The notes under the pieces: model-generated | Databases searched by the model: none | The model's input: the letters and a program-made list of their open reading frames with translations, nothing else | What the model was told of the DNA's origin: nothing | NCBI RefSeq assembly: GCF_001194135.2 | Contig: NC_068993.1 | Location: 42,170,271-42,219,886 of the forward strand | DNA from: Octopus bimaculoides | Lineage: Eukaryota | Length of the DNA: 49,616 nt | Direction: 5' to 3' | Program-made: the position numbers and the translations under genes | Shown here: positions 74 through 47,580 of the stretch, in pieces | Position numbering within the stretch: the stretch's first letter is position 1 | Layout: the number at the start of each line of letters is the position of its first letter

Positions 74-121
74 TTAGGGTTAGGGTTAGGGTTAGGGTTA
101 GGGTTAGGGTTAGGGTTAGGG
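74..121 (+). repeat. Interstitial telomeric-type repeat (TTAGGG)8
   Basis: Eight perfect TTAGGG units; non-repeat sequence on both sides. Confidence 0.95.
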
Positions 122-6695: not shown

Positions 6696-6907
6696 CAGGG
6701 TGTCCACAAAGTCCGGCTACATGGAGTAAATAAAATCATAACATAAACAATTAAATATAAGACATAATAATTTCTTAAAGTATGTGTTAATTCCCATGTG
6801 GGTACATGGAGTAAATAAAATCATAACATAAACAATTATATATAGGAAATAATAATTTCTTAAATTATGTGTTAATCTCCATGTACCCAGACTTTGTGGA
6901 CACCCTG
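6696..6907. mobile_element. Tc1/mariner-type MITE, 212 bp
   Basis: 31-bp TIRs CAGGGTGTCCACAAAGTCYGGSTACATGGAG (2 mismatches), TA on both flanks (6694-95, 6908-09), no ORF, internal 85-bp direct duplication. Confidence 0.92.
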
Positions 6908-18675: not shown

Positions 18676-19521
18676 CACTAACTATATACATACATATATT
18701 CATATGGATGTGTGTGTACGTGTGTGTGTGTTTTTTTATTGCTTGTACAGACGGGAGAAAATTATTTAAACATTGAATAGGATGTATACATTTATCTGAA
18801 GCTAATAATTCCCTCAATTGTTACTCTGAGTTCTCCACATTTAAACATTCATACAGACGTCTGAGCGAATGAACGAACAAACAAACGAACGAATGCATAA
18901 AAAACGCTAATCTAGGAATAGCAACAATTGTGAATCATCAATTTGAAATAAATATATATTTGTCCATCAACGGTTTCTATGGAGTTACATTGCATAAATT
19001 GTAACGTTGTTATTTTGTATATGTCATTAGGACTCCGTGAAATCGATTCCCTGAATGACAGACGTAAAGTAATGAAATGTTAAGCTAACAGAAAAGAATT
19101 TGTATTCATCAATATCAAATATAGTTCGGAAGCTTTTCGCAATATATGTTCCAATTTATTTAGTTATAATTACACCAAGTGTTTGAATGGATAGCATCAA
19201 CTAATTCCTGTTATTTGTTTTTCTTTGAGATATAATGTTTTATAATAGTAAATCTGAATGTGGTAACATAATGTTCTATAACAGTCAACAAACTTTGGTA
19301 GCTTAAATATCAAGCACCAAGAAGAAAGTAACTAACTTATTTAATAAATAAGTGAAAAATATATTCCAAGTTTGCCGCAGACAAAATATGTTGGGAAAAA
19401 TTTCGTTTGTGGAGAAAGTTTTTTTTTACTTTCATAATATGAATAATTAACTGAAGTTTCACGAAGGTTGTGAGGAGCTTCAGCATGACCGCATTCGCAT
19501 GGTTGAAACGTATAACAGAAT

Positions 19522-19670
19522 GGGGGATCACTCAGCTCGTCCGTCGATGAAAAGCGCGGCTATCCGCGTGAACTGATGCGAATTTCAGGATTCAGTGAAC
19601 ATCGACACCTCGAACGCACATTGCGGCCACGGGATCCCATCGTCCCAGGGCCACATCCGGTCGAGAGTTA
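19522..19670 (+). rRNA. 5.8S: Solitary 5.8S rRNA-derived copy lacking about the first 10 nt; probable retro-pseudogene
   Basis: GGATCACTCAGCTCGTCCGTCGATGAA...GAACATCGACACCTCGAACGCACATTGCGGCC matches conserved eukaryotic 5.8S blocks in order; no 18S or 28S nearby. Confidence 0.92.
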
Positions 19671-19675
19671 CTTCT

Positions 19676-19912
19676 AAGGCGGTGAGCTGCCAGAAACGCT
19701 AGCACGCCGGGCGAAACGCTTAGCTGTATTTCGTCTGCAGTTACGTTCTGAGTTCAAATTCCGCCGAGGTCGACTTACCTTTCATCCTTTCGGGGTCGAT
19801 TAAATAAGTACCAGTTACGCACTGGGGTCGATGTAATCGACTTAATCCGTTTGTCTGTCCTTGTTTGTCCCCTCTGTGTGTAGCCCCTTGTGTGTAGTAA
19901 AGAAATAAGATA
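19676..19912 (+). mobile_element. Full-length, well-preserved SINE family A fused 3' of the 5.8S copy
   Basis: AAGGCGGTGAGCTGCCAGAAACG head, B-box GAGTTCAAATTCC, complete body and AAAGAAATAAGA tail. Confidence 0.93.
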
Positions 19913-21032
19913 TGAAACGTATAATAGAATAAGAGAATAAGGTTATTGTAATTGAAAGAAAGACATTCTACTCTGTTCAGAGAAGTTTAGAAGTTTGGGA
20001 GTAACGCTGGTACTGAAATCTGTGACTGACAAATACGATATGTTGCATGAAATGATGTTATTTCATAAGCAAATAACGCACCAGATAATATTTGATATGC
20101 AATGATATCTTGATATACAAATGTCATCTGACAATCAAATAACTTACTACAAACAACATTGTAACTCTTATTAAATAATCCCATTGGTGGCAAATTCATT
20201 ACCAGTCGAACAACTTTCTCTTTCCTCGAAACCACAACTGCCAAGGTCCGTACACCACTTGAAAACAAATGGTAAAAGGGAGGGTAGAATGGCTTTAATG
20301 ATACTAAAACTTTATGTATAAAAGTTGACAATAAAGTATAATTACTAAAAGATTCAAGTGAAATATGATGAAATATATAAGGACTGATAATTTGTCATCA
20401 CGCGCGATTTTTAGGACATTGCAAACTGTTAAACTAGTACCTTTTATCCTGCTCAGAGTAAAAGAAAGCTTTTTATCAGTTATGGTAAATGAGATAACAA
20501 TAAAAGAAGAAATAAAGCGAAATAATTTGAGGTGGTGATTAAAGAACCAATAAAAATATCAAAGTTAATAAAACTGCCAGTATGAGTCAAGGCATTTAGC
20601 AATTATAAATTTATAGAGATAAAAATCATTTCATACAAGTAAAAAATGTGAGTAGATATTTCCCACAATGCAAGTGATGACTTATAAAGTAACAACGTTT
20701 ACTTTAATGAAACACTGTTGAATGTGTATTTCAGAAGAATGTTGCCTTCTGCTCTGATCCATACCACATTAACGAAATCACCACGACTACGCAAGTGACC
20801 TAAATACATTAACTTCAGTTAAATACAAGCATATAATCAACAGCTCACTAGACATTCTTCGCATGAAAGATCTTGGTCATGGGTCCGTAATCAGCATGTG
20901 AATATTACCCAACAATTTACAGCAGAGTATTATTCCTTACATGGTGAGTACAAAATTGAAACCAGACGACTGAGCGTGTGGCATTAACCTTTGCACTACT
21001 GCAGAATGTCCTCATGTATGTATGTGTGTGCG

Positions 21033-24479: not shown

Positions 24480-25035
24480 TTTTGTTGGTATTTGGTGGTA
24501 TCTATGTCGGAAATAAATATTTACTATCACACGAACAATGATATTTTTCACAGATTGTCAACATTTGATGGCATGTATATCGGAACTAAACATTTAATAT
24601 CTAAATGCAAAACTATTTAGAATTTTTAACATTTGGTGGTATCTATGTCAGAAATATACATTTTAATATCTGTCTAACTACATTGTTGTTGAGAGTTGTT
24701 AACATTTGGTTGTTGCTATGTCGGAAATAAACATTTAATGTATGCATAACTACTAAGATATTCAGTGATTGTCAACGTTTGATGATATCTATGTGTGAAA
24801 AGCACATTTTCTTGTTAACATTTGATAGTATTCCTGTCGGGAACAAACAACTAATATATGTCGAACTGCAATGTTATAGAGAGAGAGACAGTCAGTAATT
24901 CGTGTTATCTTTCGTGGAAATAAATATTTCATTTATGCTTAACTACAATGTTATTCACAGACTGTCGACAATTGCTGGTATCTATATCGGGTATAAACAT
25001 TTAATATATTTCCAAACTACAATGTTTTTATGACA
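24480..25035 (+). repeat. Degenerate minisatellite, ~72-73 bp unit, ~8 copies
   Basis: Motif AACATTTGGTGGTATCTATGTCGGAAATAAACATTTAAT recurs near 24490, 24563, 24631, 24704, 24777, 24820, 24898, 24970. Confidence 0.85.
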
Positions 25036-40457: not shown

Positions 40458-41340
40458 GTAAAGAGTAAAGGAAGCTGATTTCTTTTCTTATTAATCATGT
40501 TCCAATCCAGATTCATCTTTAAAAATACACACATACACACACACATACACACTCACACATGCACACACACACATGCACGCACACGCACACACACACACAC
40601 GCACACGTACACACATGCATCACGTAAACACAGATACAGAGGCAATCGCATGTTCAGATAAGTAAATATATATATATATATATATATANNNNNNNNNNNN
40701 NNNNNNNNNNNNNNNNNNNNNNNNNNNNNNNNNNNNNNNNNNNNNNNNNNNNNNNNNNNNNNNNNNNNNNNNNNNNNNNNNNNNNNNNNNNNNNNNNNNN
40801 NNNNNNNNNNNNNNNNNNNNNNNNNNNNNNNNNNNNNNNNNNNNNNNNNNNNNNNNNNNNNNNNNNNNNNNNNNNNNNNNNNNNNNNNNNNNNNNNNNNN
40901 NNNNNNNNNNNNNNNNNNNNNNNNNNNNNNNNNNNNNNNNNNNNNNNNNNNNNNNNNNNNNNNNNNNNNNNNNNNNNNNNNNNNNNNNNNNNNNNNNNNN
41001 NNNNNNNNNNNNNNNNNNNNNNNNNNNNNNNNNNNNNNNNNNNNNNNNNNNNNNNNNNNNNNNNNNNNNNNNNNNNNNNNNNNNNNNNNNNNNNNNNNNN
41101 NNNNNNNNNNNNNNNNNNNNNNNNNNNNNNNNNNNNNNNNNNNNNNNNNNNNNNNNNNNNNNNNNNNNNNNNNNNNNNNNNNNNNNNNNNNNNNNNNNNN
41201 NNNNNNNNNNNNNNNNNNNNNNNNNNNNNNNNNNNNNNNNNNNNNNNNNNNNNNNNNNNNNNNNNNNNNNNNNNNNNNNNNNNNNNNATATATATAACGT
41301 GAGAGAGTTAGGGGTTGGGGGTACAACCCACTAAAGGATA

Positions 41341-46837: not shown

Positions 46838-47580
46838 ATGATACAGTTCCTGGACGTATTAATAATAACACGCACCAAGTATGGATTCAGGACATCCGTA
46901 TACCGCAAGCTGACCTTCACCGGACGATACCTCAACTTCAATTTCCACCATCCATACAGTGTAAAGAGAGGGATTGCTCAGTGCCTAAAACATCGAGCAA
47001 AGAATATAAGTAGTGATCGAGATACCAACCACGATGAAATGATCAAGCTCAGTAACAATCTATTAAGCAACAACTACCCCCAAAACATACTATCTACTCC
47101 AATTATGAAAAAAAGAGAGGATAAAACCAACAAACTGTCTACAGTCTGTCTACTCTATGTGAAAGGACTCTCCGAAAAGATACAAAAGATATGCGGCCCA
47201 AATGACATCAGGACAGTTTTCAAGAGTAAGAGAACACTTTGCAAATATCTCCTTCGGTTACAACCACCAATAGAAGAGAATATGACCCAAAACTGCGTGT
47301 ACTCTATCCCAATCAGCTGTGGTAGGTTATACAAAGGTGAAACACGTCGCCACCTCAAAATAAGGGTAGAGGAACATCGCAAAGCTGTGACACGAGGAGA
47401 TATTAATAAATCGGGTATAGCCGATCGGGTATGGAAAAATGGAGACCACCTCTCCCTGTGGGATGAAGTTAAATAATAGACAGAGAACACCACTGGAAAA
47501 TACAAAAACTAAAAGAGGCAACACATATGCTGGGACGCAACAACCTCTTAAGCAGACCGAGTGCAGATATGAACAGCATA
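46838..47580 (+). mobile_element. 5'-truncated Penelope-like retroelement: RT C-terminus/thumb plus GIY-YIG endonuclease, one frameshift near 47472
   Basis: FLDVLI, SVYRKLT, GRYLNFNFHHPYSVKRG, CVYSIPISCGRLYKGET, RVEEHRK; continues in shifted frame IIDREHHWKIQKLKEATHM; ends in (TA)n. Confidence 0.93.

What the first reader, a model, noticed from the sequence alone, without database searches (positions are those of the whole stretch)
19504..19930. 5.8S rRNA-SINE chimera inserted as one unit inside an 18-bp target-site duplication
Seen: a 5.8S rRNA copy (19522-19670) is joined by about 5 nt (CTTCT) to the first base of a full-length family A SINE (19676-19912). The pair is flanked by TGAAACGTATAACAGAAT (19504-19521) and TGAAACGTATAATAGAAT (19913-19930), a 17/18 match. 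Removing the insert rejoins an older SINE-B-like tail (CTTCAGCATGACCGCA...TGAAAC...AGAATAAGAGAATAA), supporting a single integration. Established: LINE machinery makes bipartite retrocopies such as U6-L1 by template switching or RNA ligation, and SINEs with tRNA, 7SL, 5S and 28S-derived parts are known. Inference: either a one-off capture of the Pol I-derived 5.8S RNA after complete reverse transcription of the SINE, or a member of an amplified 5.8S-headed composite SINE family, which I do not know to be described.
Basis: partly seen in the sequence, partly recalled or inferred. Interest (0 to 1): 0.85.

Follow-up and report, generated by a model that had tools for sequence, protein, structure and literature searches.

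The report
5.8S rRNA–SINE chimeric retrocopy in octopus
A decayed copy of the octopus's own 5.8S ribosomal RNA and a full-length SINE were pasted into the genome together in what looks like a single retrotransposition event; this is a clean example of a known kind of accident, with an RNA partner (5.8S) that I could not find reported before.

Summary
Window 19504-19930 contains an 18-bp target-site duplication (17/18) around a 5.8S rRNA copy (19522-19667), 8 unassigned bases (19668-19675) and a full-length SINE (19676-19912), all in the same orientation.

Real octopod-type rDNA, recovered through spurious ORFs in the protein collection, shows three things:
- The 5.8S part is 94.5% identical (138/146) to the lineage's own 5.8S.
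- It has no ITS1 upstream and no clear ITS2 downstream.
- All 8 differences are G/C to A/T.

That 5.5% decay equals the TSD's (1/18) and about half the SINE's distance to a sibling copy in Octopus bimaculoides. The sibling has its own TSD and no 5.8S.

Best explanation: one target-primed reverse transcription event. The LINE enzyme copied the SINE RNA to its 5' end, jumped to 5.8S rRNA near its 3' end, and stopped 10 nt before the 5.8S 5' end.

It is disfavoured: 0 of 11 other 5'-intact copies carry 5.8S, and 5.8S has no Pol III promoter.

Verdict: new member of a known kind, of moderate-to-low interest.

The parts
19463..19503 (+). Boundaries are approximate.
   Evidence: Alignment A4 with L124 61545-61735 and L124 69975-70170(-). 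The family has >=9 copies in L124 and >=5 in the window.
19504..19521 (.). Left copy of the 18-bp target-site duplication, TGAAACGTATAACAGAAT
   Evidence: 17/18 with 19913-19930. Unique at that offset outside gaps and microsatellites.
19522..19667 (+). Retro-copied 5.8S rRNA. It corresponds to positions 11 to about 156 of the roughly 162-nt octopod 5.8S. It lacks the first 10 nt (AACCCTGGAC) and about the last 6 nt. It has 8 substitutions, all G/C to A/T.
   Evidence: Rfam 92.5 bits. 138/146 identical to the identical 5.8S of L001, L002 and L003. No ITS1 homology upstream.
19668..19675 (+). Junction filler TTACTTCT of unknown origin. The first 4 nt could be 5.8S/ITS2-boundary sequence if a 4-nt deletion is assumed.
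   Evidence: The local alignment to rDNA ends at 19667. The rDNA continues GCGGTTACGA or GCGGTCACGA. The filler is not part of the SINE consensus.
19676..19912 (+). It has A-box-like (19683-19695) and B-box-like (19750-19762) motifs read by eye, and an A-rich tail ...GTAAAGAAATAAGATA.
   Evidence: >=13 copies in the window and 17 hits in L124. Both ends are defined by alignments A1 and A3. The sibling copy at L124 ~40604-40897(-) is 89-91% identical over the full length and has its own TSD, TATAAGGCCTA.
19913..19930 (.). Right copy of the target-site duplication, TGAAACGTATAATAGAAT
19931..19941 (+). Continuation of the older SINE-B tail (AAGAGAATAAG) after the insertion
   Evidence: Contiguous with 19504-19521 in the paralogues.

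Best explanation
This is a bipartite (chimeric) retrocopy made in one target-primed reverse transcription event, probably a dead-end one-off.

Inferred sequence of steps:
1. A LINE-encoded endonuclease/reverse transcriptase nicked the bottom strand in the A-rich tail of an older SINE, at the left edge of the future TSD (5'-GTTTCA^ACCATG-3' on the bottom strand).
2. It used the SINE RNA as template and copied it all the way to its 5' end.
3. Instead of finishing, the enzyme, carrying the nascent cDNA plus 4-8 extra bases, switched to a molecule of the host's own processed 5.8S rRNA. It entered at or within about 6 nt of that RNA's 3' end.
4. It copied 146 nt and stopped 10 nt short of the 5.8S 5' end.
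5. Second-strand synthesis and repair produced the 18-bp duplication.
6. The insert has since decayed neutrally by about 5%.

Shown by the data: the anatomy, the boundaries, the identity of the source RNA, the shared orientation, the single TSD, the equal decay of the parts and the contiguous empty site.

Inferred: the enzyme, the order of copying, the template jump itself and the origin of the 8 extra bases.

From established knowledge of type 2 Pol III promoters, transcription of the SINE starts at about its first base. The upstream 5.8S part would therefore not be in the SINE's transcript, and the composite should not propagate as a unit.
For: - One 17/18 TSD encloses both parts. No direct repeat of 5 nt or more flanks the SINE alone or the 5.8S alone.
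- The empty site is contiguous in two paralogous copies of the host repeat.
- The SINE is complete at its 5' end, as expected if reverse transcription ran to the end of the template.
- The 5.8S part matches the lineage's own 5.8S at 138/146. It has no ITS1 and no clear ITS2, so it came from processed RNA and not from rDNA.
- Both parts are in sense orientation.
- All 8 substitutions are G/C to A/T, 3 of them at CpG. This is the spectrum of in-situ decay in a 34% G+C genome.
- The decay levels agree: 5.8S 5.5% (95% CI 2.4-10.5), TSD 5.6%, and SINE about 10% pairwise to a sibling, or about 5% per lineage.
- The features match the published definition of template-switch chimeric retrogenes, which lists ribosomal RNAs and SINEs among known partners (PMC2104539).
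- The cDNA of the SINE 5' end is complementary to the 5.8S 3' end over AGGCGG(T) (p about 0.01-0.05), which could have favoured this acceptor.
Against: - The junction is not the seamless product that the AGGCGG(T) microhomology predicts. Eight bases (TTACTTCT) are unexplained.
- The 5' part is not a full-length RNA copy: it lacks 10 nt at the 5' end and about 6 nt at the 3' end. The classical chimeras have full-length 5' parts.
- No LINE partner sharing the SINE's 3' tail was found in 126 kb.
- Template switching cannot be told apart from prior RNA-RNA ligation using one locus.
Confidence: 0.75

Rival explanations
1. The locus is one member, or the founder, of an amplified composite SINE family whose head is 5.8S-derived. 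The composite would be transcribed from some upstream or acquired promoter and retrotransposed repeatedly.
For: - SINEs with 5S-, 28S- and snRNA-derived parts exist (PMC4758252; reference list).
- A 5S unit fused upstream of a tRNA head has taken over promoter function in some Deu-SINEs.
- No genome-wide search was possible, so copy number is unknown.
- The protein-collection search is nearly blind to SINE ORFs: only 4 hits for a very abundant repeat.
Against: - The 5.8S has no other copy in the window, or in 76 kb of O. bimaculoides that holds 17 SINE hits.
- 0 of 11 other 5'-intact SINE copies carry it (95% upper bound 24%).
- The same subfamily exists without 5.8S.
- The 5.8S part is no more diverged from real 5.8S than the TSD is from itself, leaving no room for a long master-copy history.
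- 5.8S is a Pol I product with no internal Pol III promoter, and the SINE's own promoter would start transcription downstream of it (established knowledge).
Confidence: 0.07
2. This was still one insertion event, but the two RNAs were joined before reverse transcription. An RNA ligase would have joined the 5.8S 3' end to the SINE RNA 5' end, as proposed for some U6/L1 chimeras. The hybrid RNA was then copied straight through.
For: - It gives the same anatomy as template switching: single TSD, same orientation, SINE 5' end intact.
- RNA ligation is named as an alternative mechanism for sense-oriented 28S/L1 chimeras (bioRxiv 10.1101/2025.02.02.635956).
Against: - The 4-8 extra bases at the junction do not fit a direct end-to-end ligation, unless the SINE transcript carried a 5' leader.
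- The 5.8S 3' end appears trimmed or deleted.
- 5.8S 3' ends are made by exonucleases and carry 3'-OH, not the cyclic phosphate used by the RtcB-type route (my knowledge, not tested).
Confidence: 0.1
3. Two separate events occurred. The SINE inserted first and made the TSD. Later a 5.8S cDNA or rDNA fragment was captured exactly at the SINE's 5' boundary, for example during double-strand-break repair, without a duplication of its own.
For: Filler bases at the junction are also typical of end-joining repair. One locus cannot rule this out formally.
Against: - It requires a break at exactly the boundary between the left TSD copy and SINE base 1.
- Neither part has a private TSD.
- The parts show equal decay.
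- The fragment's ends coincide with the ends of processed 5.8S RNA rather than arbitrary rDNA positions, and there is no ITS.
Confidence: 0.03
4. Assembly artefact: a draft short-read assembler joined rDNA reads to a SINE-containing contig.
For: The window is a gap-rich draft (N runs at about 14.9-15.3, 21.1-22.1, 33.7-34.1, 40.7-41.3 kb and elsewhere). Repeats are where such assemblies fail.
Against: - The 5.8S part carries 8 decay substitutions, lacks 10 nt and has no spacers, so it is not made of reads from active rDNA.
- It is embedded between a TSD copy and unique flank, with a matching TSD 409 bp away.
- The empty site is validated by paralogues.
Confidence: 0.02

Closest known systems
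Template-switch chimeric retrogenes (U6/L1, U3/L1, 5S/L1, 28S/L1 in mammals; WEIRD-MGL 'MINE' and WEIRD-MgSINE in Magnaporthe)
   Same: A copy of a small, abundant cellular RNA lies 5' of a retroelement copy. Both are in sense orientation, both sit inside one short target-site duplication, and the whole was made by LINE machinery in one event (features listed in PMC2104539; catalogue in bioRxiv 10.1101/2025.02.02.635956).
   Different: - The partner RNA is 5.8S, which does not appear in that catalogue (0 occurrences) or in my other literature searches.
- The 3' part is a complete SINE rather than a 5'-truncated LINE, so the jump was from the very end of the template.
- The 5' part is slightly truncated at both ends.
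- There are 4-8 filler bases.
- The host is a cephalopod mollusc, where the responsible LINE is unlikely to be L1 and was not identified.
SINE families with rRNA-derived modules (SINE3 and other 5S-headed SINEs; SINE28 from the 28S 3' end; 5S-headed Deu-SINEs)
   Same: rRNA-derived sequence is joined to SINE sequence. Such families are thought to begin as just this kind of template-switch product (PMC4758252).
   Different: Those are amplified families with many copies and, for 5S, an internal Pol III promoter in the head. Here only one copy is known, and the 5.8S part has no known promoter and lies upstream of the SINE's start site.
Processed or tailless retropseudogenes of non-coding RNAs
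   Same: A decayed copy of a processed non-coding RNA with no flanking spacer, inserted by LINE machinery with a TSD.
   Different: In human, products of nucleolar Pol I rRNAs are strongly under-represented and no 5.8S case was reported (PMC5322556). Here the 5.8S did not prime its own insertion but rode on a SINE.
Octopus SINEs (OK, OR1, OR2 of Ohshima and Okada 1994, as cited in PMC4758252)
   Same: The 3' module is an abundant octopus SINE present in O. bimaculoides.
   Different: I could not assign it to a named family because no repeat library was available. Neither ARAGORN nor Rfam recognises a tRNA in the focal copy.

Membership tests
Template-switch chimeric retrogene (Buzdin/Gogvadze definition, PMC2104539) | (v) The chimera is flanked by short direct repeats (one TSD around the whole) | tested here: met
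   18-bp TSD, 17/18. No private TSD for either part.
Template-switch chimeric retrogene (Buzdin/Gogvadze definition, PMC2104539) | [quoted passage not shown] | tested here: met
   5.8S (+) by Rfam and SINE (+) by alignment. The join is not strictly direct: 4-8 filler bases.
Template-switch chimeric retrogene (Buzdin/Gogvadze definition, PMC2104539) | (i) The 5' part is a full-length copy of a cellular RNA | tested here: inconclusive
   146 of about 162 nt are present. 10 nt are missing at the 5' end and about 6 nt at the 3' end relative to ends predicted by homology. Mature 5.8S ends have not been mapped in octopus.
Template-switch chimeric retrogene (Buzdin/Gogvadze definition, PMC2104539) | (ii, iii) The 3' part is a 5'-truncated retroelement copy, truncated at a random site | tested here: not met
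   The SINE is full length at its 5' end. The jump was from the template's end, not from an internal site. This is a variant of the same mechanism rather than evidence against it.
Template-switch chimeric retrogene (Buzdin/Gogvadze definition, PMC2104539) | The 5' part derives from processed RNA, not genomic DNA (no flanking gene sequence) | tested here: met
   No ITS1 upstream, and homology ends before ITS2.
Amplified SINE family with an rRNA-derived head | Many dispersed copies share the same head-body junction, each with its own TSD | tested here: inconclusive
   There is no second copy in window + L124 (126 kb), and 0 of 11 other 5'-intact SINE copies carry 5.8S. A genome-wide search was not possible (closed; uninformative; searches show the protein route is blind to it).
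Amplified SINE family with an rRNA-derived head | The head supplies an internal Pol III promoter | not testable with these tools
   From established knowledge, 5.8S is processed from a Pol I transcript and has no Pol III promoter. No transcription data are available.
tRNA-derived SINE (3' module) | Short, non-coding, highly repeated, flanked by TSDs, defined 5' and 3' ends | tested here: met
   >=13 copies in the window and 17 hits in L124. The sibling copy has its own 11-bp TSD.
tRNA-derived SINE (3' module) | The head is recognisably tRNA-like | tested here: not met
   ARAGORN finds no tRNA and Rfam finds nothing at E<=1 on 19660-19930. Only A-box-like and B-box-like (GAGTTCAAATTCC) motifs are visible by eye. 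The tRNA origin of octopus SINEs rests on the literature.
5.8S rRNA (5' module) | Matches the 5.8S covariance model and the host lineage's own gene | tested here: met
   92.5 bits against 117.4 for real genes. 94.5% identity to three identical octopod-type 5.8S genes.

The most novel reading that the evidence does not exclude
The locus is a member or the seed of a young composite SINE lineage with a 5.8S-derived 5' module. The composite would be transcribed from outside, or would have evolved a promoter, and so be mobilised as a unit. That would be the first 5.8S-headed SINE and a caught-in-the-act example of how molluscan 'jigsaw' SINEs acquire new heads.
Probability: 0.07. Interest if true: 0.7.

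Novelty: new member of a known kind. Interest (0 to 1): 0.35.

Why it matters
This is a well-resolved natural example of a reverse transcriptase running off the 5' end of a SINE RNA and continuing on another cellular RNA, in a cephalopod. That step is the one invoked to explain how SINEs gain and swap modules, including in molluscs.

It adds 5.8S rRNA, a Pol I-derived ribosome-bound RNA, to the list of RNAs that LINE machinery can capture. Surveys in human found such nucleolar RNAs strikingly under-represented.

It also shows that the octopod 5.8S is itself unusually diverged from the metazoan norm. That matters for anyone judging rRNA pseudogenes in these genomes against a vertebrate reference: against human the copy looks 23% diverged, but against its real source only 5.5%.

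As a single dead-end insertion it has no evident function.

Tried and rejected
There is therefore no junction depth, no empty-allele test and no RNA evidence.
- Exact-ORF look-ups of three window ORFs around the site found nothing.
- The metagenome scan with CCGGTCGAGAGN{0,20}GGCGGTGAGC was badly designed.
- The protein collection returned no junction-frame ORF. The SINE's own frames returned only 4 O. bimaculoides proteins, so this negative says nothing about copy number. For the same reason I did not spend search of protein representatives or the third protein search.
- I considered and rejected the idea that the 5.8S part is much older than the insertion, or was A-to-I edited. That idea came from its 77% identity to human 5.8S, including apparent A>G and T>C changes. 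The 'odd' bases are native to octopod 5.8S, and the true differences are 8 G/C to A/T changes.
The real rDNA does not support that reading.
- AGGCGG(T) microhomology is only marginally significant and does not predict the observed junction.
- No LINE sharing the SINE's 3' tail was found in 126 kb.
- Pfam on three window ORFs gave nothing. Rfam and ARAGORN find no tRNA in the SINE.
- Buzdin et al. 2003 (PMC169886) is not held. Accession searches did not reveal which species L001 (GCA_024449705.1) or L002 (ERR13252635) come from.
Full report
**What is there**

Rfam finds exactly one RNA gene-like feature in the 49.6-kb window. It is a 5.8S rRNA match at 19512-19670 on the + strand, 92.5 bits against a gathering score of 42, covering the whole model.

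Directly downstream, 19676-19912 is a repeat. It has at least 13 diverged copies elsewhere in the window. The pair is bracketed by TGAAACGTATAACAGAAT (19504-19521) and TGAAACGTATAATAGAAT (19913-19930), a 17/18 direct repeat.

A scan of the whole window at the same spacing looked alarming at first, with 406 positions at 17/18 or better. All but the focal pair lie in runs of N or in microsatellites. From the window's 34% G+C, I estimate the chance of such a pair at about 4e-9 per position pair.

**Finding the true source of the 5.8S part**

Against human 5.8S the copy is only 77% identical. On its own, that would suggest an old or heavily modified sequence.

I therefore translated the four open frames across the 5.8S part and the junction and searched the large protein collection.
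- All hits match one frame of the 5.8S. The eight of the 15 whose sequences I read are spurious ORFs across real rDNA.
- One of them comes from the cuttlefish Acanthosepion pharaonis, and the weaker hits I read share that sequence type.
- Three hits are of a type much closer to the focal copy.

Their DNA was retrieved:
- L001, from NCBI assembly GCA_024449705.1.
- L002, from a Logan assembly of ERR13252635.
- L003, from an ENA metagenome.

Together they show the 18S-ITS1-5.8S-ITS2-28S layout, each covering part of a unit, with 5.8S scoring 117.4 bits. I could not name the species of these three records. The three 5.8S genes are identical to each other although their spacers differ.

The focal copy matches them at 138 of 146 positions over 19522-19667. 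The bases that looked strange against human are native to this lineage's 5.8S.

The eight real differences are G>A (4), C>T (1), G>T (1) and C>A (2). All are G/C to A/T, and three are at CpG. This is what neutral decay in an AT-rich genome produces. It is not what A-to-I editing would produce.

**Boundaries of the 5.8S part**

Upstream of GGGGGATC the rDNA reads AACCCTGGAC, preceded by ITS1. The focal locus has the TSD copy there instead, with no spacer similarity. The copy therefore starts 10 nt inside the RNA.

Downstream, the rDNA continues GTCGAGAG-GCGGTTACGA (L001) or GCGGTCACGA (L002, L003). The focal locus reads GTCGAGAG-TTACTTCT-AAGGCGG. By homology with the human 3' end (…GAGCGTCGCTT, my knowledge), the mature octopod RNA should end near …GAGAGGCGGTT. 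Two readings are possible:
- The copy stops about 6 nt short of that end and is followed by 8 unassigned bases.
- It has a 4-nt deletion, runs to TTAC, and is followed by 4 unassigned bases.

Either way there is no run of ITS2.

**The SINE**

Translations of the SINE's frames hit only Octopus bimaculoides proteins. This places the host among octopuses.

One of those proteins gave a 76-kb stretch of O. bimaculoides chromosome CM046612.1 (L124). It contains 17 SINE hits at up to 90% identity and no 5.8S.

Alignments of copies from the window and from L124 show unrelated sequence upstream of a common start, (A)AGGCGG. So 19676 is the SINE's first base, and TTACTTCT is not SINE sequence.

The last 70 nt of the focal SINE have no counterpart in the window. 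They are shared by one L124 copy (about 40604-40897, minus strand). That copy ends in the same …AAAGAAATAA(G)ATA tail, has its own 11-bp TSD (TATAAGGCCTA) and has no 5.8S.

The focal SINE is thus full length at both ends. It belongs to a subfamily that normally exists without 5.8S. Neither ARAGORN nor Rfam sees a tRNA in it, so its tRNA origin rests on the literature.

**The target**

Joining the flanks with one TSD copy gives …GGTTGAAACGTATAACAGAAT|AAGAGAATAA…. This stretch is matched contiguously, straight across the breakpoint, by L124 61683-61713, and more loosely by L124 69994-70016.

These are the tails of an older SINE-like repeat. It has at least 9 copies in L124 and at least 5 in the window.

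**One event or two**

No direct repeat of 5 nt or more flanks the SINE alone or the 5.8S alone. The decay levels agree:
- 5.8S part: 8/146 = 5.5% (95% CI 2.4-10.5).
- TSD: 1/18 = 5.6%.
- SINE: 9/99 and 20/184 mismatches to its sibling, about 10% pairwise and so about 5% per lineage.

A misassembly with active rDNA reads is excluded by the decay substitutions and by the missing spacers.

**Mechanism**

The anatomy fits the published definition of template-switch chimeric retrogenes:
- A copy of a small cellular RNA lies 5' of a retroelement copy.
- Both have the same orientation.
- One TSD surrounds the whole.
- Ribosomal RNAs and SINEs are among the known components (PMC2104539).

I therefore propose a single target-primed reverse transcription event. 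It was primed in the A-rich tail of the older SINE. The SINE RNA was copied to its very 5' end, 4-8 extra bases were added, and the enzyme jumped onto processed 5.8S rRNA near its 3' end. Copying ended 10 nt before the 5.8S 5' end.

It differs from the classical cases in three ways:
- The 3' part is a complete SINE rather than a truncated LINE.
- The 5' part is slightly short at both ends.
- There is filler at the join.

The 5.8S 3' end and the SINE 5' end share AGGCGG(T). The SINE cDNA could therefore pair with the 5.8S 3' end. The match is only marginally significant (p about 0.01-0.05), and the seamless junction it predicts is not what is seen. The 8 bases remain unexplained (note). RNA ligation before reverse transcription would give the same anatomy and cannot be excluded.

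**Family or one-off**

This is the question that decides the interest, and it is the one I could not settle. What I have:
- There is no second 5.8S copy in 126 kb of octopus DNA that holds about 30 SINE copies.
- 0 of 11 other 5'-intact copies carry it (95% upper bound 24%).
- The subfamily exists without it.
- The 5.8S part is no older than the TSD.
- From established knowledge, 5.8S has no Pol III promoter, and the SINE's own promoter would start transcription downstream of it.

The protein-collection negative is uninformative, because the same collection holds almost no SINE ORFs. My one metagenome scan was too loose and returned only chance matches. I put the family reading at about 7%.

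**Comparison with what is known**

A 2025 catalogue of LINE-1 chimeras lists U1-U6, U3, 5S, 28S, 7SK, 7SL, Y RNAs, tRNA and Alu, but never 5.8S. A human survey found nucleolar Pol I RNAs strongly under-represented among retropseudogenes. Four further full-text searches found no 5.8S-derived SINE or 5.8S chimera. The library is incomplete, so this is absence of evidence only.

Template switching is the accepted route by which molluscan SINEs exchange modules.

**Verdict**

This is a real, cleanly delimited chimeric retrocopy. It is a new member of a known kind, with a new RNA partner and a new host group, and most likely a one-off with no function. Interest is moderate to low unless a genome-wide search shows that the junction is repeated.

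Noticed in passing
L001 3093-3251; L002 431-589; L003 765-923 (compare window 19522-19667): The octopod-type 5.8S rRNA is itself unusually diverged from the canonical metazoan sequence: the focal copy, which is 94.5% identical to it, is only about 77% identical to human. This includes a change on both sides of the first hairpin (CGCGG..CCGCG instead of CGCAG..CTGCG). It scores only 117 bits on the Rfam model. Judging cephalopod rRNA pseudogenes against vertebrate references is therefore misleading.
   Followed up: partly
window 74-121: Eight perfect TTAGGG telomere-type repeats near the start of the window. This may be an interstitial telomeric sequence or a scaffold end.
   Followed up: no
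window ~14.9-15.3, 21.1-22.1, 33.7-34.1, 40.7-41.3, 42.3-42.7, 47.55-47.85 kb: Numerous runs of N, mostly flanked by dinucleotide microsatellites. The window comes from a gap-rich draft assembly, and the nearest gap is about 1.2 kb downstream of the finding.
   Followed up: partly
window 46838-47476 (+): A 212-aa ORF whose C-terminal part (…YKGETRRHLKIRVEEH…) reminds me of the GIY-YIG endonuclease of Penelope-like elements. Pfam gave no hit, so this is only a recollection.
   Followed up: partly
The chimera inserted into a decayed copy of its tail.
   Followed up: partly
L124 ~40700-40790: In the O. bimaculoides chromosome-level assembly, the sibling SINE copy is interrupted by a 10-N gap flanked by a duplicated stretch of about 60 nt of the SINE. 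This is probably a scaffolding artefact.
   Followed up: no
window 19869-19897: The focal SINE subfamily carries a 14-nt tandem duplication in its 3' part (CCCCTCTGTGTGTAG x2). The O. bimaculoides sibling shares it, so it is a subfamily feature and not a local event.
   Followed up: partly
window 6718-6884 and 24490-24794: Two longer-period tandem repeats: 85 bp x 2 at 92% identity, and 73 bp x 4.3 at 68%.
   Followed up: no
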